A program made the position numbers and the translations under genes. Under the pieces are notes generated by a model that did no database searches, was not told the DNA's origin, and was given only the letters and a program-made list of their open reading frames with translations. A DNA stretch of 64,000 nucleotides, from positions 124,001 through 188,000 of IMG/VR virus record IMGVR_UViG_3300037010_002844. The stretch is one strand, 5' to 3'. Below, piece after piece: positions 53,518 to 61,233 of this stretch; within the stretch, counting starts at the first letter, position 1, and every line of letters begins with the position of its first letter.

Positions 53518-55146
53518 TCACCGTAGCAACCAGCTAAAATCGCTCACGTCAGCATTCTTGATCTGCGATGGATCGCGGGGCTTGTGAACGTTGTAAGGAT
53601 TAACGCCCCTGATGTTAGGATTGATCAGCGGCTGTGCTGACTGAATGTCACCTGGCATCTGCGCTGAGTCCCTGCGCGCGACCTGCGTGGCCTTCAACAT
53701 GGCCATCGCCATCTCATGAGCCTGTTCATTGACTCCTGAACCGCCGTTGGTCAGCCAAATGCCAATCGCTAGACTCATAATCAAGTCGTCATGACTGTCA
53801 CGGGTGGCCTGAGCCTTGGACCCCTGCCAGATGAAGGCCTGCATCTGATCGTAGAAGCGTTGCGAGTAGATTTTGACAATCTTGTTGCGGATGATCTCCT
53901 CGAGCTTCGCCAGGATCTGCGGACGAGTGTTACCTTGCGTCTCAAAGCCAGGAATTGCCTCTGGGTCGCTCGAGATGTACTCGAACATGTCGCCTGTCAT
54001 ATTGCGATAATACAGACGCTTGTAGCCGATGTCTCTGAGTCTGACAGCCGTCATGTAGCCAAAATTGTTACGCTCTGGGCACAGCAAGGCAGTGTTATAC
54101 TTCTTGCCGTAGTCAGCTAGAAGGTCGGCCAACTTGTCAGGCGGAATCTTGCCCATGTATTCTGCGACGACTTCACAATCATTTACGTCAATGACGTGCA
54201 TCGTCGAATAGTCGGCAGCGTCTCCACGGGCCACGTCAGATGAAATAACATACTTCTTGCCCGGCTCAGGATCAGACCAGATCCAGACAGCATTCTGCGG
54301 TCCTTCTTTGCGAATCGGACTGTCGATCATGCTCCTGAGATAGTCCATCTCCGTGGGTTGCAGGAATGTGTCACCTGACGAGATGAAGTCGCAAAGGAAC
54401 TCCTGGGCAACTTTTCGCTTTGGCAGGTTCTTGGTTTCCTTGTCAAACCATGCCTGATCGTGCTCGGGATGAACGTGCCATGGAAGATTGATAGTGTTGA
54501 ACTCATTGACCTGTGCTATTGCGTCGGTCCACAACTTGTAGTACATGCCGCCGACGCCGTTAGGCGTGGAAATAATGATCGCAGAACCGCCCGTGGAGAT
54601 AGTCGGATAGAGACCGGTCCAGATCTCTTCAAAGTCTCTGATGAATGCGGCCTCATCGACGATGAGAAGTGACAAGGCCTCCGAACGACCAGCGTCTGGT
54701 GAGGTCGGTACGGCCGCGATGACTGACCCATTGGCAAACGTGATCTGTTGCTTGGTCGATTCGAACTTGGTGAGGAGCAACCACTTGGGCAGGCCGTCAA
54801 GGATTGTCTTCACCTTCTTGATGAAGTTCATGGCGGTCTGCAACTTGGTAGCGATGACCAGGACGTTCTTGTCCTTCTTGAAGATCGCGTACCAGACGGC
54901 GTAGGCCGCGGTGACGGTTGACAGGCCCAGCTGACGTGACTTCAGGACGATGTTGAAGCGATTCTCTTCAAATGCCTTGATGCAGTCATCCTGAAAGTAG
55001 TAGGTGTCGAACGGGATCAGGCCCCTCTTGGGGTGCTGGATCTTCGCATAGTTCTTCATGAAGTAGACGGCGTTTTTGCCGCACTTCAGAATCTCGCGGA
55101 CCTGTTCTTCTCTACCGAGCGGACCGTTGGACGTGGCAATTGACAT
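53518..55146 (-). CDS. terL: Terminase large subunit (T4 gp17-like)
   Basis: LKSRQLGLST Walker A, LLIVDEAAF Walker B, ISTPNG, DVARG and HDDLIMSLA nuclease motifs. Confidence 0.96.
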   Translation of the reverse strand: MSIATSNGPLGREEQVREILKCGKNAVYFMKNYAKIQHPKRGLIPFDTYYFQDDCIKAFEENRFNIVLKSRQLGLSTVTAAYAVWYAIFKKDKNVLVIATKLQTAMNFIKKVKTILDGLPKWLLLTKFESTKQQITFANGSVIAAVPTSPDAGRSEALSLLIVDEAAFIRDFEEIWTGLYPTISTGGSAIIISTPNGVGGMYYKLWTDAIAQVNEFNTINLPWHVHPEHDQAWFDKETKNLPKRKVAQEFLCDFISSGDTFLQPTEMDYLRSMIDSPIRKEGPQNAVWIWSDPEPGKKYVISSDVARGDAADYSTMHVIDVNDCEVVAEYMGKIPPDKLADLLADYGKKYNTALLCPERNNFGYMTAVRLRDIGYKRLYYRNMTGDMFEYISSDPEAIPGFETQGNTRPQILAKLEEIIRNKIVKIYSQRFYDQMQAFIWQGSKAQATRDSHDDLIMSLAIGIWLTNGGSGVNEQAHEMAMAMLKATQVARRDSAQMPGDIQSAQPLINPNIRGVNPYNVHKPRDPSQIKNADVSDFSWLLR

Positions 55147-55529
55147 CAGCTGAGCTCAAACACTGTCTTGCGGCGGTAATAAGCAGTGCGCTTTGGATTG
55201 TGAATGCCGAAGTTGATGACCTCGACTGAATCATCGGAGGCTCCCTCAGAAGTCTTCAGGGCCTTGCCAGCGAGTTCCTTGTACGTGGCCTTCACCTTCT
55301 TCATGACGGCGCTGATGATGGCTTGCGACTCCTCAGAGTAACGCCTCTTCATCAGGATCATTTCCTTCTCCGTGCCAAAGTTGACAACTGCGGCGTAAGA
55401 GGCGATGATGCGATTACCGTGCAGGGTAAACTTCACAGAGTAACCTGCCGTATTGGGCGTTGATGAACGGCCCCATGAGGTGTCGATTGCCTGACCCAAG
55501 GCATTGAAGTCGATTTTCACGTCTGCCAT
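55146..55529 (-). CDS. Hypothetical protein
   Basis: AGGAG RBS and TACTTA motif; coupled to terL. Confidence 0.75.
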   Translation of the reverse strand: MADVKIDFNALGQAIDTSWGRSSTPNTAGYSVKFTLHGNRIIASYAAVVNFGTEKEMILMKRRYSEESQAIISAVMKKVKATYKELAGKALKTSEGASDDSVEVINFGIHNPKRTAYYRRKTVFELS

Positions 55530-55561
55530 GTCCCGTTGCTCCTGGCCTAAGTATAGGGCGC

Positions 55562-55864
55562 TCAGTCGATCTCGAGGTCGACGACCAACGGAGGCCTACC
55601 TGCGACCTCAGCATCCAACGCGGCGCGTTCGGGTCGCCAGCCAGCAGCCCATTCCTTGCGCCTCGGGGCAGCCCAAGCCAAGGCGCAACGATTGCAGCAG
55701 GCAAATTCATGCCACGCTGCCTCATCGTCTTGCGTTCTCATCACCGTCCCACAGACAGCACAGGACAGCGGCACGCTCGGGGAGGCCTCACACGGAACGA
55801 TAACGCAGTAACCGCCCGGTCTCCGAGAGATCAGACGGTCACGTAGGTACGGTTGACGATCCAC
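55562..55864 (-). CDS. Putative Zn-finger protein
   Basis: CAVC..CCNRC. Confidence 0.65.
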   Translation of the reverse strand: MDRQPYLRDRLISRRPGGYCVIVPCEASPSVPLSCAVCGTVMRTQDDEAAWHEFACCNRCALAWAAPRRKEWAAGWRPERAALDAEVAGRPPLVVDLEID

Positions 55865-55878
55865 CGAGCGATCTTACA

Positions 55879-58464
55879 TCACTCGTAGACTACCTTGGTG
55901 TCCTTTTCATTCTTGGTGATCTCAAGAACGGTGTCGGCAGAATCCTTGACGCCATCAACGTGAGTGATAATCATGACCGTTCTGAAGTGGCGCTTCAACG
56001 AAGACAACAAACGATTGCAAGCCTCGACGCCAGCGTCGTCCAGTGCACCAAAGCCCTCATCCAGGATGAACATGTCAGTCTTGGGCAGCGACGAGACGTT
56101 GATCAGCGCCACACGGATGGCGATCGAGCTGATCATCTTCTCCATGCCTGAACCCAACTCAACGATTCGCCGTGAGTCGCCGTAGTTGATGTAGACGTCC
56201 ATCCAGTCAGACTCTGGGTCAACCTCGAGTTCTACCGTGAAGTCAACAATGCCAGTCAAGATCTTGGCGATCTCTGCGTTGATGACCGGCAACTGCGATG
56301 TCACGATTACGCTCGGGATTCCCTTTCGTGAAAAGGCGTTGGCAACGAGCTCATAGACCTTCATGCCCTGCAAGAGGGTCTCGCGGTTCTTCTTCTCATT
56401 CAATGCTTTTTCTGCGTCCGAAATAAGCTTACCTTTGTCGGCGGCGGCTGTCATCTTCTCCCCGTCGAGCCTCGCAATGACCGCCGTGAGTTCATCAATT
56501 TCAGTGCGGAGGGAAACCACCTCTGCATTTTCGTCATTTTTCAGAGCCTCTTCTAGTTCATCCAGCTTGGCCTTAGAAATCTCAAGACTGGAGATCTGGG
56601 TCTCTTGCTGCGTCTCGAGCTTCACCAGTTCGATTTGCTTGTTTGATAGCTCGACCTTCAACCGCGAGTGAAGCTCATGCAACTTCTGAATCTTCTCGAC
56701 TTTGTCTCGAATGTTTTCCGTCTTCAGTTCGTCCAACGAGACGGCGGCTCGGTCAAGCTTCTCCAAGGCGCGACCAGTCTTGTCACGTTGCGATTCGATC
56801 TTGCCTTTGACAAAGTGTGCATCCTTGATGAACTTGCAGGTTGGGAACTTGTCGCCACACGGGACGTCATCAAGGATCTTCAGGGAACGCTCCTGTTGCT
56901 TCAACAGAGCGGCTTCCTTCTCGTGAGAGTGCTTCAACGATACGACAGTCGACTCAAGGGCGTTGAACGCCTTCAGGCGCTTCTTCAACTCTTCGATGTC
57001 GTGTTCTTCCTTGAGGGTGTCGATCGTCGACACCTTGCCTTCAATCTTGCCGATCTCCACGCGGAGGTCGACGATCTTGGCGGCAACAGACGCCACCTGA
57101 CGCTCCAGAGTGATGACCTTGTTACGTTGCGATTCGACCTGCGACTTGCTAACTGGTGTGAAGTCACTGTGACGAGCGAGCTGAGCACGAACCTCAGCTA
57201 GACGCTCTGCGGCCTCCTGCTCCTTGTACGTCTTGTCGTCGATGGCTGCCGACAACTTTTCGAGCTTTGACTTCAGGTCAGTGGCAACCTGATTCCAATC
57301 CTTGTCGGGATAGGCACGCAGCTGTGCCTTAGCGTTGTTGACATCCTTGTTGGCTAGGTCGTACATCCTGTCAAAGACGTCGAGGTCGAGGAACCGCGAC
57401 AAGATCTGCCGGCGGCGCGAGGAACCCTGCTGAATGAACTGATTGATCTCACCTTGTGCCGAAAGCGAGGTCAACAAGAAGTCGTCTTGGCTGCCGATGA
57501 GGTTTCTGATGACCTTTTCGGTGTCATTTCGCTGTTCACCCGCTAGGTCGATAACGTCGCCAGATTCTGTGACACGGTACGCATTCAATGAAGTGACTGC
57601 GTGAACAATGCCTCTCCGAGCATTCTCGTGTTTGACAGTCTGACGCTCGAAGACGTAATCGGTGCCTCCAACGTTGACGATGGCACGAGTGTAGCAGTAG
57701 GGCTTGCGAGCGTTGATGACGTGCAGGTTCTTGATCGAACCGCGGTCAGTACTGTTGAACAGCGAGTACATGATCGAGCCGACGATTGACGACTTGCCGG
57801 CGCGGTTCTGACCGAAGATGCCAACGATGCCCTCGAGCCCGTCAAAGTTGATGTGATTGCCCTCGCCGTAGGCAAAGACATTGTCAAACTTCAAGTCACG
57901 GAGAGACCACTTCGTGTTCCGCGGAGCCTCCTCCATGCCAGTAACAGCGGCGAGGTATGTCTTGACCTGCTCACCGACGCGGGTCCAGACTTCATCCGGG
58001 TAGTTTGAGTCTACGTGGTAGTTGCGAATCAGGCCCATCAGGATGTCAGGATTGCGTAGGTCCGCTCGGGCCAGCGTCTGAGTGCCAGCCGTTAGCGTTT
58101 CCTTGTTGATGTGCTGGTCAACTTTGAAGGTGACTTCCGTCGCATTCATCGTCTGCTTCAGCATCGATGTCAACGACTGGACTTCTTGTTGCGCGACGTG
58201 CGTGCGACTCTTGATCCTAAACCGTGAACCATGAGGATATGTGCTAGCAACCTCGAACGTCTTCTTGACGTCACCTTCCCAGTCGACGGTAACAAAAGGC
58301 TTCGGGTTGGGCAGCTGCCTGAAATCCACGCTAAAGCTGTTACGATCCTTGATCGACCAGCTCAAGTACCCGTGTACCAGGTCTTCCGCGTAGTTCTGCT
58401 GGACTGTCGAACCCGGGTATGCAATCCAACCCTGGTTAACCTTGATACGAACTTTCTTGCTCAT
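55879..58464 (-). CDS. sbcC: SbcC/Rad50 (gp46-like) ATPase carrying the C-terminal part of SbcD at its N-terminus
   Basis: IAYPGSTVQQNYAE (SbcD motif), then GQNRAGKSS Walker A, coiled-coil with PCGDKFPTC hook, GSGMEK signature, ILDEGFGALD, ITH. Confidence 0.9.
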   Translation of the reverse strand: MSKKVRIKVNQGWIAYPGSTVQQNYAEDLVHGYLSWSIKDRNSFSVDFRQLPNPKPFVTVDWEGDVKKTFEVASTYPHGSRFRIKSRTHVAQQEVQSLTSMLKQTMNATEVTFKVDQHINKETLTAGTQTLARADLRNPDILMGLIRNYHVDSNYPDEVWTRVGEQVKTYLAAVTGMEEAPRNTKWSLRDLKFDNVFAYGEGNHINFDGLEGIVGIFGQNRAGKSSIVGSIMYSLFNSTDRGSIKNLHVINARKPYCYTRAIVNVGGTDYVFERQTVKHENARRGIVHAVTSLNAYRVTESGDVIDLAGEQRNDTEKVIRNLIGSQDDFLLTSLSAQGEINQFIQQGSSRRRQILSRFLDLDVFDRMYDLANKDVNNAKAQLRAYPDKDWNQVATDLKSKLEKLSAAIDDKTYKEQEAAERLAEVRAQLARHSDFTPVSKSQVESQRNKVITLERQVASVAAKIVDLRVEIGKIEGKVSTIDTLKEEHDIEELKKRLKAFNALESTVVSLKHSHEKEAALLKQQERSLKILDDVPCGDKFPTCKFIKDAHFVKGKIESQRDKTGRALEKLDRAAVSLDELKTENIRDKVEKIQKLHELHSRLKVELSNKQIELVKLETQQETQISSLEISKAKLDELEEALKNDENAEVVSLRTEIDELTAVIARLDGEKMTAAADKGKLISDAEKALNEKKNRETLLQGMKVYELVANAFSRKGIPSVIVTSQLPVINAEIAKILTGIVDFTVELEVDPESDWMDVYINYGDSRRIVELGSGMEKMISSIAIRVALINVSSLPKTDMFILDEGFGALDDAGVEACNRLLSSLKRHFRTVMIITHVDGVKDSADTVLEITKNEKDTKVVYE

Positions 58465-59114
58465 GCGTCTCCGAGGACGGTGGCGCCTGGGTATTTGTCG
58501 AGGTCGCCTTCATCGATCACAAGTTCAACTTCACGAGAGCGAAGGAACTGCAACTTATGGATGTCGCCCAGGAGGGCAAAATCATAATCTTTGAAAAAGT
58601 CAAGATTGAGACCTTCCTCGATCAACCAATCGGTCTCCGTCCGCGCACCGTACACCGGTCCGTGATAACACGCAATGTTGATCTTACCGGGTAGCGGTTT
58701 GACTGCTGCCCAACCTTCAACATCAAAGAGGCTGTAGATGCACCAAACGTAACCCGGTGAGAACTCATAGCAACCGCTCTGCTTGTAGAGATGAATCATC
58801 GGGTCCTTCAATGCCTCGACGATGGGAGTGACAGCATCCTGTCGCGAGAGGTTGACAAGGTTCCCGTCATGATTTCCGAGCGTCAAGTGAACCTCGGCGA
58901 CCGATGACATTGACTTGAGCCACCTCGTCAACTCATCGATGTACTCTGGGCTAAGGCCCGTCGTCTTGGTATGGAAGATGTCGCCACCGACAAAGATGTG
59001 CTCGATCCCCTGATCCTTGACGTCCTTGACAAAGGCATCAAAGACCTCACGGTACTCATCGTGCCGCGAAAGGCCTCGCCAGTGCACGTCTGCAATATGT
59101 GCTATCTTGAGCAT
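58461..59114 (-). CDS. sbcD: SbcD/Mre11 (gp47-like) nuclease, N-terminal part
   Basis: HIADVH, GGDIFH, GNHD, YHG, GDIHK; ends before the YPGS motif. Confidence 0.88.
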   Translation of the reverse strand: MLKIAHIADVHWRGLSRHDEYREVFDAFVKDVKDQGIEHIFVGGDIFHTKTTGLSPEYIDELTRWLKSMSSVAEVHLTLGNHDGNLVNLSRQDAVTPIVEALKDPMIHLYKQSGCYEFSPGYVWCIYSLFDVEGWAAVKPLPGKINIACYHGPVYGARTETDWLIEEGLNLDFFKDYDFALLGDIHKLQFLRSREVELVIDEGDLDKYPGATVLGDA

Positions 59115-59174
59115 GTGCCCTATCCAGAGGGTATAATTGAGCGCCCTGCCTGTACAAATACAATGGCGCTAACA

Positions 59175-60173
59175 TCACATTCTGATACGTAGGGGCACAT
59201 TGGTCGCTCGTGACAGGCGATCGAAGAATGAACTCGACCAGGTCGGTTCCTTCGCAGCCTCGACGGCAGCCTTGAACTGTTGCTTCGTCATCTTGCCTGG
59301 GTCGCCCCACTCACGGACATCGACCAGTGCCACGTCAACTGCGTATTCTTGCAACTTCTTGGCGATCCTGGGCGCCTTCGTCGCCCACATGTCACCGTCC
59401 AACGCTAGGGCAATGGGCGTACAATTAGCGATGATCTGAGAAAACAATCGTGACTCTTCGTTGAGGTCTGAGCCCAACAAAGGCACTGCGTTCTCACCAC
59501 ACTTCATCAGATCGAATGGCCCCTCGCAGATCACCAGACGACGCTTCCAGTCAATGTTGATCTCGTTGAATACGATGGATAGCTTGTCGTCCTCGGGATT
59601 GTCGTACTTCGGGCGCTTGTCCCACTCATCGACGCTACGACCCACGTAGAAGTTCAACTTGCCTTCCCAATCAAATGAAGGCATGATGACGCGGCGGCGC
59701 CAACGATGTTCACCTGAGACGCCAAGCTTGAAGTACCACGCGTCTCTACGAGTGACGTTCCTTTTCTTTAGGTAGGTCCAGGCCGCGAGGACGTCTGGAT
59801 CTGATAGCGACGCCAACGTCAGCAGCCTGAAGTCCTTGGGCAGCTCGAGAGGCTTTTTGTCGTTGTCGACGTCAATGTACCTGAGACGAGCGCGAACATC
59901 CTCAGGCATGAACTCATCGCGGTAGCGATTGAGTTGCGCCTGCGTTCCGTACTTCTTGATCAGGGGTGCCAGCGTGTGGGCCTTCCATCCGCACGACCAG
60001 CAGTGATTCACGTCATCTTCTACACGGATGACCAGCTTGCGCTTACTCGAATCCTTGTGCGAGTGACACGTGGGAATCGGACAGCGCACCCCGAAGTTCT
60101 TGCCGTTTGCAGCAAGGTGTCCCTTCCCAAATACGCTCTCGTAGAACTTACATTTCTCAGAGAGGCTCTGCAC
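59175..60173 (-). CDS. DNA primase (Zn finger + Toprim)
   Basis: CPIPTC..HCWSC, YLKKR, ICEGPFD, LDGD, DPG. Confidence 0.85.
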   Translation of the reverse strand: MQSLSEKCKFYESVFGKGHLAANGKNFGVRCPIPTCHSHKDSSKRKLVIRVEDDVNHCWSCGWKAHTLAPLIKKYGTQAQLNRYRDEFMPEDVRARLRYIDVDNDKKPLELPKDFRLLTLASLSDPDVLAAWTYLKKRNVTRRDAWYFKLGVSGEHRWRRRVIMPSFDWEGKLNFYVGRSVDEWDKRPKYDNPEDDKLSIVFNEINIDWKRRLVICEGPFDLMKCGENAVPLLGSDLNEESRLFSQIIANCTPIALALDGDMWATKAPRIAKKLQEYAVDVALVDVREWGDPGKMTKQQFKAAVEAAKEPTWSSSFFDRLSRATNVPLRIRM

Positions 60174-60197
60174 GCTTACATTGTCCCGCTCAGGACC

Positions 60198-60776
60198 TCA
60201 TATGTTCATGAGACAGGCAGCACGGGCAATAACGTACGCATCGGTTGCATCACGCGACCAATCGACGGAGGTACCGTTCTTCTTGGTCGGCCACTTCACA
60301 TGTGACAAATCGTGCTGTGCCATGTGATCGAAGACCTGCTCCTTCTGGCTCTTGCCTGCTACCGAAGGCTTCTGCAGCTTCAAGCCACACTGCTTGCGGG
60401 CCGTGGGTGCAGAGATGTAATTGGGCTCTACGTTGAAGGTGTTCCGTGAGATATACGAGACGATCCCGTTGAACCTCAGCAACGAGGCAATGGTCGTGGC
60501 AGACGACATCCCCTGTCGAAAGCCCAGTAGAGGTTCTTCAATTGCGACGGCAATCTCGGCATTAGCGTGATTGACGTGCAATCCGTTTAGGTAGTGAGCC
60601 ACCACGTCGGCCTTGTCCCACAGCGTCTTACACTTCTTGAACTCGATATGATCGAGGTGGACAATGTGATTGCCAGTCCCGTCGGGGACCACGTCACGGT
60701 CGATCAAACAGACGCCCGTAATCGACGTAGAAACATCGAGTCCCAACACGTAACGGCGTTTCATCTTCAGTGGCAT
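60198..60776 (-). CDS. RuvC-like Holliday junction resolvase
   Basis: VLGLDVSTSITG, AIEEP, DATDAYVIA. Confidence 0.85.
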   Translation of the reverse strand: MPLKMKRRYVLGLDVSTSITGVCLIDRDVVPDGTGNHIVHLDHIEFKKCKTLWDKADVVAHYLNGLHVNHANAEIAVAIEEPLLGFRQGMSSATTIASLLRFNGIVSYISRNTFNVEPNYISAPTARKQCGLKLQKPSVAGKSQKEQVFDHMAQHDLSHVKWPTKKNGTSVDWSRDATDAYVIARAACLMNI

Positions 60777-60816
60777 GTCATAACTGTGGACCCTCGCGGC
60801 CTCTCGTAAAATCGAG

Positions 60817-61233
60817 TTACAATAGACCTAGGCCCTTCAATTCACGCTCTGTGATTACTCGGAGGGCCACGCCGTGATCACGGCACCATATTCCAGCGGC
60901 CTCTAGCTTCTTGACAACCGTCGGACGGGTCAACCGCTTGGAAGGCTTGATTTCGACCACCTCGATGCGACCATCATCATACTCGATCTTGAAGTCTGGG
61001 ATATAACGGCGAACGCGGCCCGTCTTTTTGTTACTGATGTAGTCGATGGTAAATGCCTCGTACCACCAGGTCTTCACTGAAGCCTCACCGTCGAGGTACT
61101 CCATGAACTTGAGCTCCCATCCAGAGCGATACTTACACGCCGCGCCCGTCTTCGTCGAGGTGTATGTCCCCGTGATGTAGTGACCCTTGCGCTTCCGGCG
61201 CTTACGCTTGACGGGTGCTTTCTTGGCGGCCAT
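60817..61233 (-). CDS. Head completion nuclease (T4 gp4/TnsA-N-like)
   Basis: YRSGWELKFMEYLD, WWYE, RRYIPDF, EIKP, ITE. Confidence 0.85.
   Translation of the reverse strand: MAAKKAPVKRKRRKRKGHYITGTYTSTKTGAACKYRSGWELKFMEYLDGEASVKTWWYEAFTIDYISNKKTGRVRRYIPDFKIEYDDGRIEVVEIKPSKRLTRPTVVKKLEAAGIWCRDHGVALRVITERELKGLGLL

What the first reader, a model, noticed from the sequence alone, without database searches (positions are those of the whole stretch)
55879..59114. SbcD nuclease split inside its catalytic domain, with the C-half fused to SbcC
Seen: the 217-aa ORF has the phosphoesterase motifs through GDIHK, then a 26-aa tail (RSREVELVIDEGDLDKYPGATVLGDA*). The next ORF overlaps by ATGA, has a GGAG RBS, and starts MSKKVRIKVNQGWIAYPGSTVQQNYAE, i.e. 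the missing YPGS motif and capping domain, before a complete Rad50 ATPase from about residue 185. Known: in SbcD/Mre11 the GHxH-type motif and YPGS lie a few residues apart in one chain. Inference: a fused SbcDC re-split at a new point. The clean coupling argues against a sequencing error, and the acidic tail and basic head peptide could zip the halves together.
Basis: partly seen in the sequence, partly recalled or inferred. Interest (0 to 1): 0.7.

Follow-up and report, generated by a model that had tools for sequence, protein, structure and literature searches.

The report
Phage SbcD-SbcC nuclease gene in two pieces
A jumbo phage encodes its only SbcD/Mre11-SbcC/Rad50 DNA-end nuclease as two coupled genes cut through the middle of the nuclease fold. 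This is a natural "fractured gene" of a kind first noted in 2009 and linked to a homing endonuclease, not an error and not a new kind of system.

Summary
ORF1 (58461..59114, minus strand, 217 aa) carries all five phosphoesterase motifs plus a 26-aa acidic tail. ORF2 (55879..58464, 861 aa) starts in an ATGA overlap behind a GGAG. It has a 12-aa basic head, then the YPGS strand and capping domain, then a complete SbcC/Rad50 ATPase.

It is not an error. Four assemblies give the identical junction, and hundreds of metagenomic relatives share the split, with conserved tail and head but varying stop/start geometry.

Most relatives are single fused SbcD-SbcC proteins of about 1040-1090 aa, with only 10-26 residues between GDIH and YPGS. 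In the split-site relatives I looked up, a 297-314 aa TnsA-like nuclease gene, a putative homing endonuclease, sits exactly between the halves. Seven contigs and LR756508 show this. The window carries the endonuclease-free allele.

Complex prediction supports reassembly by beta-strand complementation (0.92 against 0.00 for the best control). Tails average charge -5.6 and heads +4.8.

Dassa et al. 2009 described one such "SbcD-like" fractured locus, with a 25-aa tail and a 9-aa head. This is therefore a new member of a known kind. The breadth, the re-fusion and the patchy phylogeny add to it. Function of the two-piece enzyme is inferred, not shown.

The parts
58461..59114 (-). ORF1: N-terminal piece of the SbcD/Mre11 nuclease (217 aa). 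It carries all five phosphoesterase motifs: DVH 59082-59090, GGDIFH 58971-58988, GNHD 58866-58877, CYHG 58659-58670, GDIH 58557-58568.
   Evidence: ORF list and sequence. PF00149 E 1.5e-11 covering 1-190 of 191 profile positions, and phrog_100 'SbcD-like'. The motif residues are invariant in 32 relatives.
58464..58541 (-). Acidic C-terminal tail of ORF1 (residues 192-217, net charge about -6). It is absent from short-linker fused relatives. By homology to the P0124 model it forms strand, short helix, strand.
   Evidence: Comparison with fused relatives. Tail consensus R.VEL.IDE.DL.KYPGAEVIE has 65-70% column identity. Mean tail charge is -5.6 over 120 clusters. Tail residues lie in the predicted interface. 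Secondary structure comes from the unsplit homologue.
58469..58472 (-). GGAG Shine-Dalgarno for ORF2, embedded in the last tail codons of ORF1, 4 nt before the ATG.
   Evidence: Read from the sequence. Relatives have GAGG/GGAG-type purine runs in the same acidic tail codons. Its function is inferred.
58461..58464 (-). ATGA stop/start overlap. This is the fracture point, and it is the empty site that an endonuclease gene occupies in some relatives.
   Evidence: Junction geometry varies among relatives. An endonuclease gene sits at exactly this point in L008, L037, L038, L039, L041 and L003.
58429..58464 (-). Basic N-terminal head of ORF2 (MSKKVRIKVNQG, net charge +4). It is absent from short-linker fused relatives and is predicted to be a beta-strand pairing with the tail.
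   Evidence: Mean head charge is +4.8 over 106 clusters. Residues 2-12 lie in the predicted interface.
57910..58428 (-). C-terminal part of the SbcD/Mre11 module (ORF2 residues 13-185). It holds the WIAYPGS strand (YPGS 58408-58419), the HGYLSW strand, the capping domain and the linker.
   Evidence: It aligns to residues about 200-385 of fused relatives. The P0124 model matches E. coli SbcD 4LTY at E 1.6e-13. In the predicted complex, ORF2 strands 13-17 and 33-38 pair with ORF1 strands 179-183 and 3-7.
55879..57909 (-). SbcC/Rad50 ABC-ATPase with coiled coil (ORF2 residues 186-861 plus stop). Features: Walker A 57790-57813, Cx6C hook-like CGDKFPTC 56836-56859, signature 56137-56154, Walker B 56053-56070, H-loop 55960-55971.
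   Evidence: AAA_23 at 42.3 bits (cut-off 27). SMC_N and SbcC_Walker_B score below their cut-offs. phrog_77 'SbcC-like' E 1e-63. Motifs located. It is the only SbcC-like gene in the 309 kb genome.
60817..61233 (-). Context only: a 138-aa stand-alone TnsA-like PD-(D/E)xK nuclease ORF. It shares the nuclease domain (GRVRRYIPDF.IEY) with the endonucleases that occupy the fracture site in relatives. It is syntenic in relatives and is not itself in the fracture.
   Evidence: PF08722 E 1.8e-14. It is the only PF08722 match in the genome. The same small ORF sits at the same place in L037, L038 and L051.

Best explanation
ORF1 and ORF2 are the two pieces of a naturally fractured SbcD-SbcC (Mre11-Rad50) fusion gene, the phage's only one.

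The break lies in the turn of a small beta-hairpin-like insert, between phosphoesterase motif V (GDIH) and the YPGS strand. ORF1 therefore holds every metal-binding motif. ORF2 supplies two core beta-strands, the capping domain and the whole Rad50-type ATPase.

The pieces are translated separately from one message. Translation is coupled: an ATGA overlap, with the SD sequence inside the acidic tail codons. The pieces then reassemble non-covalently by beta-strand complementation, helped by the oppositely charged tail and head.

The fracture site is the home of a free-standing TnsA-like endonuclease gene, a putative homing endonuclease. The window carries the endonuclease-free allele. Either the endonuclease was lost here, or the allele is an uninvaded target.

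Shown: the anatomy, the conservation, the phyletic pattern and the endonuclease association. Inferred: separate translation, assembly, activity, and that the endonuclease caused the fracture.
For: Anatomy and coupling.

Real sequence: four assemblies are identical.

Selection:
- 13 IMG/VR loci at 69-77% identity share the split, with conserved tail and head but different stop/start arrangements. These are ATGA, GTGA and TTGA overlaps, TGA directly followed by GTG, TAG-t-ATG, and a 14-nt overlap.
- There are 395 clusters of N-half size.
- Deep lineages L050 and L051 are also tightly coupled.
- All motif residues are invariant.
- This is the only SbcC-like gene in the genome.

Ancestral or alternative state: fused proteins of 1030-1090 aa with 10-26 residue linkers dominate.

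Structure:
- The AF2 model of the natural unsplit long-insert relative P0124 (70% identical to the window protein) has pLDDT 93.
- It places the break in the turn between strands 213-219 and 222-234.
- Its fold matches E. coli SbcD 4LTY at E 1.6e-13.

Binding:
- Complex prediction of ORF1 with ORF2(1-190) scored 0.92 against 0.00 for the best of 3 controls.
- In the tool's calibration, that mark was reached by 58 of 80 solved complexes and 2 of 110 mismatched pairs. These counts hold only roughly, because my own alignments were used.
- The runs agree on at least 97% of contacts, and the partner pLDDT is at least 75.
- The ORF2 strands slot beside ORF1 strands 3-7 and 179-183.

Charges: tails average -5.6 and heads +4.8. 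In unsplit long inserts the equivalent segments are only -3..+1 and 0..+2.

Endonuclease:
- Homologous 297-314 aa ORFs (PF08722, mostly with a ROS/MucR finger) lie exactly between the halves in 7 of 7 contigs examined and in LR756508.
- The C-half start overlaps the endonuclease 3' end. The overlap is 8 nt in L037, L038 and L039 and 4 nt in L008; in L003 and L041 the genes are adjacent without overlap. This fits the gene-fracture model of Dassa et al. 2009 (PMC2677866).
Against: - No experiment or RNA/protein data exist for this phage. The two-piece enzyme's assembly and activity rest on conservation and a predicted complex. That complex could score high simply because the halves come from a fold known as one chain.
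- The read evidence is Logan contigs, not raw reads. Three of the four samples are flagged as possibly being the source.
- Unsplit proteins with the full-length insert exist (P0124, P0243, P0245, P0285). The insert could therefore predate both the split and the endonuclease, in which case the endonuclease merely colonised an existing gap.
- Endonuclease occupancy is low: 1 of 13 IMG/VR split loci, and about 7 endonuclease clusters against hundreds of split clusters.
- No cleavage activity or homing has been shown for this TnsA-like family.
Confidence: 0.75

Rival explanations
1. The split arose on its own, by a stop/start mutation in the exposed loop of a pre-existing hairpin insert of a fused SbcDC. 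The TnsA-like endonuclease gene only later colonised the resulting intergenic gap, as free-standing phage endonucleases commonly do. The window allele never had the endonuclease.
For: Unsplit proteins carrying the full 45-46 residue insert occur in at least three places in the tree. Intermediate hairpin linkers of 19-27 residues are common. Most split alleles lack the endonuclease. Within the near clade, a single origin of the insert-bearing state is not rejected (p-AU 0.32).
Against: P0124, the unsplit long form nearest the window, is nested inside the split clade. It looks like a secondary re-fusion rather than an ancestor. Homologous tails, heads and endonucleases occur in two host-gene clades that cannot be made one clade (AU p 1e-127). 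That pattern is easier to explain if the cassette travels with the endonuclease. The full-length ROS/MucR+TnsA family was found only at this site.
Confidence: 0.3
2. Programmed recoding: a -1 frameshift or stop read-through at the ATGA junction yields a single fused SbcDC protein, so the split is only apparent.
For: ORF2 is in the -1 frame relative to ORF1 and overlaps it. A natural 1077-aa fused relative with the same insert exists (P0124).
Against: There is no slippery heptamer at the junction. Relatives place ORF2 in the -1, 0 and +1 frames, with overlaps of 4 or 14 nt or gaps of 0-1 nt. Some have a 0.9 kb endonuclease gene in between, so no single recoding mechanism is conserved. Every relative keeps its own start codon and an upstream purine-rich SD. 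Charge complementarity is strong in split forms and weak in unsplit long-insert forms.
Confidence: 0.04
3. Artefact or decay: a sequencing or assembly frameshift, or a recently inactivated pseudogene, in an otherwise fused gene.
For: Fused forms are the family norm. The window comes from a metagenome assembly.
Against: Four separately assembled runs have the identical junction with no indel. Hundreds of diverged relatives share the split with conserved tail and head. All catalytic and ATPase motifs are intact and invariant. This is the only SbcCD in the genome.
Confidence: 0.01
4. Split-intein trans-splicing: the tail and head are intein halves that ligate the two pieces into one chain, as in most 'fractured genes'.
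For: The same genomic layout (N-piece, endonuclease, C-piece) is typical of split-intein fractured genes (PMC2677866).
Against: The tail (26 aa) plus head (12 aa) are far too short for an intein. No intein or Hint family was hit. There is no conserved Cys/Ser/Thr nucleophile at either junction. Dassa et al. themselves noted that the SbcD-like locus lacks a split intein.
Confidence: 0.01

Closest known systems
'SbcD-like' fractured gene from the Lake Gatun GOS metagenome (Dassa, London, Stoddard & Pietrokovski 2009, NAR 37:2560, PMC2677866)
   Same: Two adjacent ORFs equal to the N and C parts of an SbcD-like nuclease, with no split intein. Extra residues are present at the break and absent from unsplit homologues: 25 C-terminal and 9 N-terminal there, 26 and about 12 here. 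A free-standing endonuclease gene lies between the halves and overlaps the downstream start. That is the layout I see in the window's relatives L008, L037-L041 and L003.
   Different: The window has no endonuclease between the halves. The downstream piece here continues into a full SbcC/Rad50 ATPase, which is not mentioned for the GOS fragment. The intervening ORFs found here hit TnsA-like PF08722 with a canonical E...PD...ExK pattern and give no Vsr hit, whereas the 2009 ORF was called Vsr-like. I could not retrieve the 2009 sequences (no supplement is held). Identity of locus type is therefore inferred from the description.
Aeromonas phage Aeh1 NrdA-a / MobE / NrdA-b, a 'genes in pieces' ribonucleotide reductase (Crona et al. 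2011, PMC3045599)
   Same: An essential phage DNA-metabolism enzyme is cut inside its catalytic core at the site of a free-standing endonuclease gene. The pieces are translated separately and reassembled without RNA or protein splicing. Oppositely charged tail peptides are unique to the split form.
   Different: The enzyme and the endonuclease family (HNH MobE) are different. In Aeh1 the tails were shown experimentally to be essential, for dimerisation rather than for heterodimer formation. Here nothing has been tested. The polarity is reversed: the Aeh1 C-tail is basic and the N-tail acidic. The SbcD fracture is widespread and mostly endonuclease-free.
Fused SbcD-SbcC proteins of related phages, e.g. 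Microcystis phage Mel-JY01 WWT39521.1 (1066 aa) and LR756501 (1202 aa)
   Same: Same domain order, with Mre11 nuclease, capping domain and Rad50 ATPase in one reading frame. Same neighbourhood, with a primase-like gene upstream. They are 26-36% identical to the window proteins.
   Different: They are one chain, with only about 5-9 residues where the window has tail, stop, start and head.
Canonical two-gene SbcCD / Mre11-Rad50 (E. coli SbcD+SbcC, structures 4LTY and 6S6V; T4 gp47+gp46, recalled from memory)
   Same: Same phosphoesterase motifs and the same fold. The P0124 model against 4LTY gives E 1.6e-13. An ABC ATPase with a coiled coil is present.
   Different: Canonical systems are divided at the nuclease/ATPase boundary, and the subunits bind through a helix-loop-helix on the coiled coil. 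Here the division runs through the nuclease beta-sandwich, and the rest of the nuclease is covalently fused to the ATPase. The coiled-coil apex has Cx6C instead of the CxxC zinc hook.

Membership tests
SbcD/Mre11 nuclease (calcineurin-like phosphoesterase plus capping domain) | Five phosphoesterase motifs: DxH, GD, GNH[DE], H, G[HD]xH | tested here: met
   All five lie on ORF1 and are invariant in 32 relatives. PF00149 scores 45.5 bits against a cut-off of 21.5.
SbcD/Mre11 nuclease (calcineurin-like phosphoesterase plus capping domain) | Mre11/SbcD three-dimensional fold, nuclease plus capping domain | tested here: met
   Tested indirectly. The AF2 model of the unsplit relative P0124 (70% identical to the window protein) has pLDDT 93. 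Its top 50 Foldseek PDB hits are all SbcD/Mre11, the best being 4LTY at E 1.6e-13, probability 1.00. The window pair itself was only modelled as a complex.
SbcD/Mre11 nuclease (calcineurin-like phosphoesterase plus capping domain) | Nuclease domain made from one polypeptide | tested here: not met
   There is a stop/start between motif V and the YPGS strand. The split is shared by hundreds of relatives.
SbcD/Mre11 nuclease (calcineurin-like phosphoesterase plus capping domain) | Mn2+-dependent exo/endonuclease activity | not testable with these tools
   Needs biochemistry.
SbcC/Rad50 ABC ATPase | Walker A, signature, Walker B/D-loop and H-loop, separated by a long coiled coil | tested here: met
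   Motifs lie at ORF2 residues 218-225, 771-776, 799-804 and 832-835. AAA_23 scores 42.3 bits against a cut-off of 27. SMC_N spans 202-856 but at 26.1 bits is below its cut-off of 40. phrog_77 gives E 1e-63.
SbcC/Rad50 ABC ATPase | CxxC zinc hook at the coiled-coil apex | tested here: not met
   The window has CGDKFPTC (Cx6C). This spacing is conserved in all 120 relatives scanned. Whether it binds zinc is unknown.
Fractured gene / genes-in-pieces made by a free-standing homing endonuclease, without an intein | Adjacent co-oriented ORFs that are consecutive parts of one protein found unsplit elsewhere | tested here: met
Fractured gene / genes-in-pieces made by a free-standing homing endonuclease, without an intein | Extra tail and head peptides at the break, absent from unsplit homologues and oppositely charged | tested here: met
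   One caveat: four unsplit relatives carry a weakly charged version of the insert.
Fractured gene / genes-in-pieces made by a free-standing homing endonuclease, without an intein | Endonuclease gene between the two pieces | tested here: not met
   In the window the ORFs overlap by 4 nt, and the genome has no full-length copy of that endonuclease. The feature is met in relatives L008, L037, L038, L039/L040, L041, the P0392 contig and LR756508.
Fractured gene / genes-in-pieces made by a free-standing homing endonuclease, without an intein | The pieces assemble into an active enzyme, and the tails are needed | tested here: inconclusive
   Only a predicted complex is available: 0.92 against 0.00 for the best control. 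In the tool's calibration 58 of 80 solved complexes and 2 of 110 mismatched pairs reached the mark. No experiment has been done.
Split intein (trans-splicing) | Intein N and C blocks with nucleophilic junction residues | tested here: not met
   The tail is 26 aa and the head 12 aa. There is no Hint/intein Pfam hit and no conserved Cys/Ser/Thr at the junctions.
Programmed ribosomal frameshift or read-through | Conserved slippery site and a fixed frame relation between the ORFs | tested here: not met
   The frame relation and spacing differ among 13 close relatives and two deep lineages. No slippery heptamer is present.
Homing endonuclease (for the TnsA-like ORFs in relatives) | Presence/absence polymorphism at one conserved site in homologous genes | tested here: met
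   The same site is occupied in 7 of 7 contigs looked up, and occupied alleles are scattered among empty alleles on the host-gene tree.
Homing endonuclease (for the TnsA-like ORFs in relatives) | Site-specific cleavage of the empty allele, followed by copying of the gene into it | not testable with these tools
   Needs enzyme assays or crosses.

The most novel reading that the evidence does not exclude
The tail, the stop, the (optional) TnsA-like endonuclease gene, the start and the head form one mobile cassette that carries its own protein 'zipper'. By homing with co-conversion of flanks it converts fused SbcD-SbcC alleles of distantly related phages into two-piece genes that still work. This would be a splicing-free way for a selfish endonuclease to neutralise its insertion into an essential gene. 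The abundant endonuclease-free split alleles, such as the window's, and the re-fused long-insert proteins would be its fossils.
Probability: 0.4. Interest if true: 0.65.

Novelty: new member of a known kind. Interest (0 to 1): 0.42.

Why it matters
This is a natural case of an Mre11-type nuclease cut through its beta-sandwich core that still appears to be under strong selection. It says something about how robust the fold is. It also offers a ready-made pair of complementing fragments, with short charged beta-strand tags, for split-protein engineering.

For mobile-element biology, it extends a single 2009 metagenomic anecdote into a large family with several states:
- empty split alleles and endonuclease-occupied alleles;
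- a probable re-fusion;
- a phylogeny that rejects a single vertical origin.

That makes the question of how endonuclease-fractured genes arise and get neutralised without splicing directly testable with two or three cloned alleles.

For annotation, it warns that 215-245 aa 'metallophosphoesterase' ORFs followed by 860-aa 'AAA/SMC' ORFs in large phages are one enzyme.

Tried and rejected
- **No close phage relative.** Megablast of the locus against GenBank phages gave no match. Only tblastn found relatives.
- I dropped those rows and did not resend them.
- **Endonuclease search.** The search for related loci with the L008 endonuclease found only itself. The protein search was needed.
- **Endonuclease against PDB sequences.** Only a weak Ros zinc-finger match came up. 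There was no TnsA, Vsr or I-Bth0305I hit. Whether it belongs to the 2009 'Vsr-like' family remains open.
- **2009 sequences.** The supplement of Dassa et al. is not held, so I could not align their SbcD-like locus.
- **Weak N-domain tree.** The tree of 138 representatives is poorly supported, with 12 starred branches of 135. I relied on full-length trees instead.
- **Near-clade monophyly.** Monophyly of insert-bearing alleles within the near clade is not rejected (p 0.32). Multiple events are claimed only across the deep split. That grouping was named after seeing a tree.
- **Promoter/terminator scan.** It found nothing beyond chance between the ORFs.
- **Explanations considered and rejected.** Sequencing error, pseudogene, frameshifting, split intein, and an intron (there is no room for one). 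See the rival explanations.
- **RNA.** No RNA run was listed for the region in the run search (kind 'any', which is not a search for RNA), so transcription was not examined.

Full report
**1. What is in the window**

On the minus strand, ORF1 (58461..59114, 217 aa) and ORF2 (55879..58464, 861 aa) overlap by ATGA.

ORF1 matches the calcineurin-like phosphoesterase family over the whole profile (PF00149, positions 1-190 of 191, 45.5 bits). It contains motifs I-V: DVH, GGDIFH, GNHD, CYHG and GDIH. After GDIH it runs on for 31 residues and ends in the acidic tail RSREVELVIDEGDLDKYPGATVLGDA.

ORF2 starts MSKKVRIKVNQG. It continues with WIAYPGSTVQQNYAE and about 170 residues that align to the rest of the nuclease and the capping domain of relatives. 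A complete SbcC/Rad50-type ATPase follows:
- Walker A at residues 218-225;
- a long coiled coil;
- the signature motif, Walker B and the H-loop.

A GGAG lies 4 nt before the ORF2 ATG, inside the last tail codons of ORF1.

The window is part of a 309 kb IMG/VR virus record, a jumbo phage estimated 91% complete. This pair is its only SbcC-like gene. The other two Metallophos hits in the genome are partial and unrelated in context.

**2. It is not an error**

Logan contigs from four runs (sediment and microbial-mat metagenomes, four samples) cover 57500-59500 with no substitution, indel or joint. These are contigs, not raw reads, and three of the samples may include the source, so on their own they are modest evidence.

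The comparative evidence is decisive:
- Thirteen IMG/VR loci, 69-77% identical in the N half, have the same two-ORF arrangement.
- A search of 5.8 billion proteins found 395 clusters with E <= 1e-5. The best 120 are all 214-233 aa long and 67-83% identical.
- About a hundred clusters are C-halves of about 860 aa beginning M.KK[IV][KR]I[KR]...W[IM][AG]YPGS.

The tail consensus is R.VEL.IDE.DL.KYPGAEVIE, with 65-70% mean column identity. The head has 61%. Both are conserved about as well as the capping domain, which also has 61%.

**3. No recoding, intron or intein**

Among close relatives the junction takes several forms:
- ATGA, GTGA or TTGA overlaps;
- TGA directly followed by GTG;
- TAG-t-ATG;
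- a 14-nt overlap.

Two deep lineages show a 1-nt gap (L050) and a 14-nt overlap (L051). In some relatives a 0.9 kb gene lies in between. ORF2 is therefore found in all three frames relative to ORF1, always with its own start codon and an upstream purine run. No slippery site is present.

That pattern fits independent, coupled translation of two proteins and no conserved frameshift. The tail plus head (38 residues) are too short for an intein, give no intein hit and have no conserved nucleophile. With overlapping ORFs there is no room for an intron.

**4. What the unsplit state looks like**

The nearest annotated phage relative, Microcystis phage Mel-JY01, encodes one 1066-aa protein, downstream of a primase-like gene as in the window. 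The 735-kb phage LR756501 encodes one 1202-aa protein reading GDIHLRQFFKKKSMAYPSS. IMG/VR loci L017-L033 encode fused proteins of 1044-1054 aa.

A profile search of 1.84 billion representatives found 3615 relatives. Of the best 150, the great majority are 1030-1090 aa. In these, GDIH and YPGS are separated by 10-26 residues.

So the family norm is a covalent SbcD-SbcC fusion, and the window's tail and head amount to an insert of about 33 residues at the break.

Four unsplit proteins (P0124, P0243, P0245, P0285) carry a 45-46 residue linker that aligns with tail plus head.

**5. Where the break falls in the fold**

An AlphaFold2 model of residues 1-400 of P0124 has mean pLDDT 93. P0124 is a natural unsplit long-insert protein, 70% identical to the window protein. 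All of the model's top 50 Foldseek PDB matches are SbcD/Mre11, the best being E. coli SbcD 4LTY at E 1.6e-13.

In the model the GDIH strand (180-184) is followed by, in order:
- a long strand (190-202);
- a short helix (203-208);
- a strand (213-219);
- a two-residue turn;
- a long strand (222-234) that runs into the YPGS motif.

The stop/start of the split forms maps to that turn. ORF1 therefore keeps all metal ligands. ORF2 contributes core strands of the sandwich.

**6. Do the halves reassemble?**

Complex prediction with ORF1 and ORF2(1-190), using my own alignments, scored 0.92 in all three runs. The best of 3 controls scored 0.00.

In the tool's calibration this mark was reached by 58 of 80 solved complexes and 2 of 110 mismatched pairs. 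Those counts hold only roughly here, because my own alignments were used. The runs agree on at least 97% of contacts, and the partner pLDDT is at least 75.

The most confident contacts are ORF2 13-17 (WIAYP) against ORF1 179-183 (the GDIH strand), and ORF2 33-38 (YLSWSI) against ORF1 3-7 (the motif I strand). This is beta-strand complementation that rebuilds the Mre11 sandwich. Tail residues 192-217 and head residues 2-12 are also in the interface.

The model supports binding but does not show it. A pair cut from a fold known as one chain may also score high from memory.

Independent of the model, charge complementarity is a family trait:
- Net tail charge averages -5.6 (n=120).
- Net head charge averages +4.8 (n=106).
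- In the four unsplit long-insert proteins the same segments are only -3 to +1 and 0 to +2.

**7. The endonuclease**

In LR756508, a 484-kb phage whose halves are only 27-33% identical to the window's, the gene is split at the same place. Its tail is recognisably similar (EVEEMVVEEDELEKY...) and so is its head (KYRVKRVW...). A 305-aa ORF lies between the halves.

In IMG/VR locus L008, a close relative of the window, a 306-aa ORF lies at the same place. The two ORFs are 39% identical over 187 residues (E 3e-38). That is more alike than their host genes. Both have a C-terminal TnsA-like PD-(D/E)xK domain (PF08722) behind zinc-finger modules: ROS/MucR in L008, and repeated Cys pairs in LR756508.

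A protein search with the L008 ORF found 15 relatives. I looked up eight of them:
- All five with similarity over all or the nuclease half lie exactly between a 216-239 aa Metallophos ORF and an 857-872 aa ORF. These are P0392, P0394, P0395, P0396 and P0398.
- Gene order in those contigs is otherwise the same as the window's: small TnsA-like ORF, RuvC-like, primase-like, N half, C half, two small ORFs, terminase.
- Three more distant TnsA-domain ORFs sit elsewhere: beside a fused SbcDC, beside a ligase and beside an epimerase.

In L037, L038 and L039 the start of the C half overlaps the last codons of the endonuclease by 8 nt, and in L008 by 4 nt. In L038 the endonuclease start also overlaps the N-half stop. 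Removing the segment between the two ATGs gives exactly the window's geometry.

This is the presence/absence polymorphism expected of a free-standing homing endonuclease. Cleavage and homing are not shown.

**8. History**

On a full-length tree with the insert columns removed (34 rows, 1039 columns), the window sits in a starred 13-row clade. That clade holds ten endonuclease-free split alleles, two occupied alleles (L008, L038) and P0124.

P0124 is sister to the window, which suggests that it re-fused secondarily. Other occupied alleles (L039, L037) branch outside this clade, and a fused short-linker clade (L017-L023) is nested among them.

Within this near group, a single origin of the insert-bearing state is not rejected (p-AU 0.32).

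Across the family the picture differs. LR756508 and L041 (both split and occupied) group with fused Mel-JY01 on the far side of a 100%-supported branch. Forcing all nine split rows into one clade costs 396 log-likelihood units (p-AU about 1e-127). The group was defined after seeing a tree, and long branches are involved, but the margin is very large.

There are two possible readings:
- The split state is ancestral and was precisely re-fused many times.
- Homologous tail/head/endonuclease cassettes have moved between distant SbcD-SbcC alleles.

With 127 of 138 representatives short-linker fused, I favour movement. I hold this at moderate confidence.

**9. Comparison with what is known**

Dassa et al. 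(2009, PMC2677866) catalogued 'fractured genes', in which a free-standing endonuclease gene separates two gene halves that usually carry split inteins. They reported one exception without an intein.

That exception was a Lake Gatun locus with the N and C halves of an SbcD-like exonuclease. It had an intervening 'Vsr-like' ORF, 25 extra C-terminal residues on the upstream ORF and 9 extra N-terminal residues on the downstream ORF. The endonuclease 3' end overlapped the downstream gene. That description fits the relatives found here almost exactly.

Crona et al. (2011, PMC3045599) showed for phage Aeh1 NrdA, split by mobE, that oppositely charged tails unique to the split form are essential for function. 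They proposed such tails as a general, splicing-free remedy for fragmentation.

The window is thus a further member of a known kind. It is the endonuclease-free allele of the fractured SbcD-like gene.

What this analysis adds:
- The fractured gene is a full SbcD-SbcC fusion.
- The split form is abundant and mostly endonuclease-free.
- Unsplit insert-bearing forms exist, and at least one looks like a re-fusion.
- The endonucleases at this site are TnsA-like by Pfam.
- The break maps to a hairpin turn, and the predicted complementation is strand-for-strand.
- The host-gene phylogeny rejects a single vertical origin.

**10. Verdict**

The most likely mechanism has two coupled-translated chains that rebuild one Mre11-Rad50 enzyme by beta-strand complementation. 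Charged tail and head peptides help the assembly. The fracture is associated with a TnsA-like homing endonuclease, and was probably created by it.

Activity, assembly and homing remain to be shown experimentally. Interest is moderate. This is a neat and now well-populated example rather than a new principle.

Noticed in passing
window 56836-56859 (ORF2 residues 536-543): The coiled-coil apex has CGDKFPTC (Cx6C) where Rad50/SbcC normally has a CxxC zinc hook. The C-G-D/E-x-F/Y-P-T/S-C spacing is present in all 120 relatives scanned.
   Followed up: partly
window 60817-61233 (minus strand): A stand-alone 138-aa TnsA-like nuclease (PF08722, E 1.8e-14), the only one in the genome. It is syntenic in relatives, lying upstream of a RuvC-like ORF and a primase-like ORF. 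It shares the GRVRRYIPDF.IEY core with the endonucleases that occupy the SbcD fracture elsewhere. PHROGs label its family 'head closure', which looks like a misannotation.
   Followed up: partly
window 58464-58541 versus 58384-58464: In the window the tail resembles the head plus YPGS segment (SREVELVIDEGDLDKYPGATV against SKKVRIKVNQGWIAYPGSTV). The local score is 39, reached by 0 of 5000 shuffles, which hints at an internal duplication with charge inversion. The similarity is not significant in L012, L003, L050 or L051 (p 0.6-0.9), so it may be clade-specific or convergent.
   Followed up: partly
L043:5150-6765 (ENA contig k141_254692): A thymidylate synthase appears in two pieces (a 221-aa ORF and a 245-aa ORF), with a 296-aa NUMOD3-containing ORF between them that overlaps the second piece. 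This may be another fractured gene, or an intron with an endonuclease. The same contig also has a NUMOD3+TnsA-like ORF.
   Followed up: no
L037:47-1027 and the P0392 contig 387-1166: Relatives carry further TnsA-like ORFs: 326 aa with NUMOD3, and 259 aa directly upstream of the N half. L042 has a 263-aa TnsA-like ORF immediately upstream of a fused 1054-aa SbcDC. This suggests a diverse family of free-standing TnsA-domain endonucleases around this gene cluster.
   Followed up: no
P0125, P0126, P0128 (C-half relatives, 962-963 aa): Some split C-halves are about 100 residues longer than the usual ~860 aa, although their N-termini are normal. They have an unexamined insertion somewhere in the ATPase or coiled-coil part.
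   Followed up: no
window 53518-61233 (minus strand): There is a conserved gene order shared with distant relatives: TnsA-like ORF, RuvC-like ORF (DUF3882 in L038), primase-like ORF, SbcD N piece, SbcD C piece fused to SbcC, two small ORFs (100 and 127 aa), and large terminase (542 aa, 53518-55146).
   Followed up: partly
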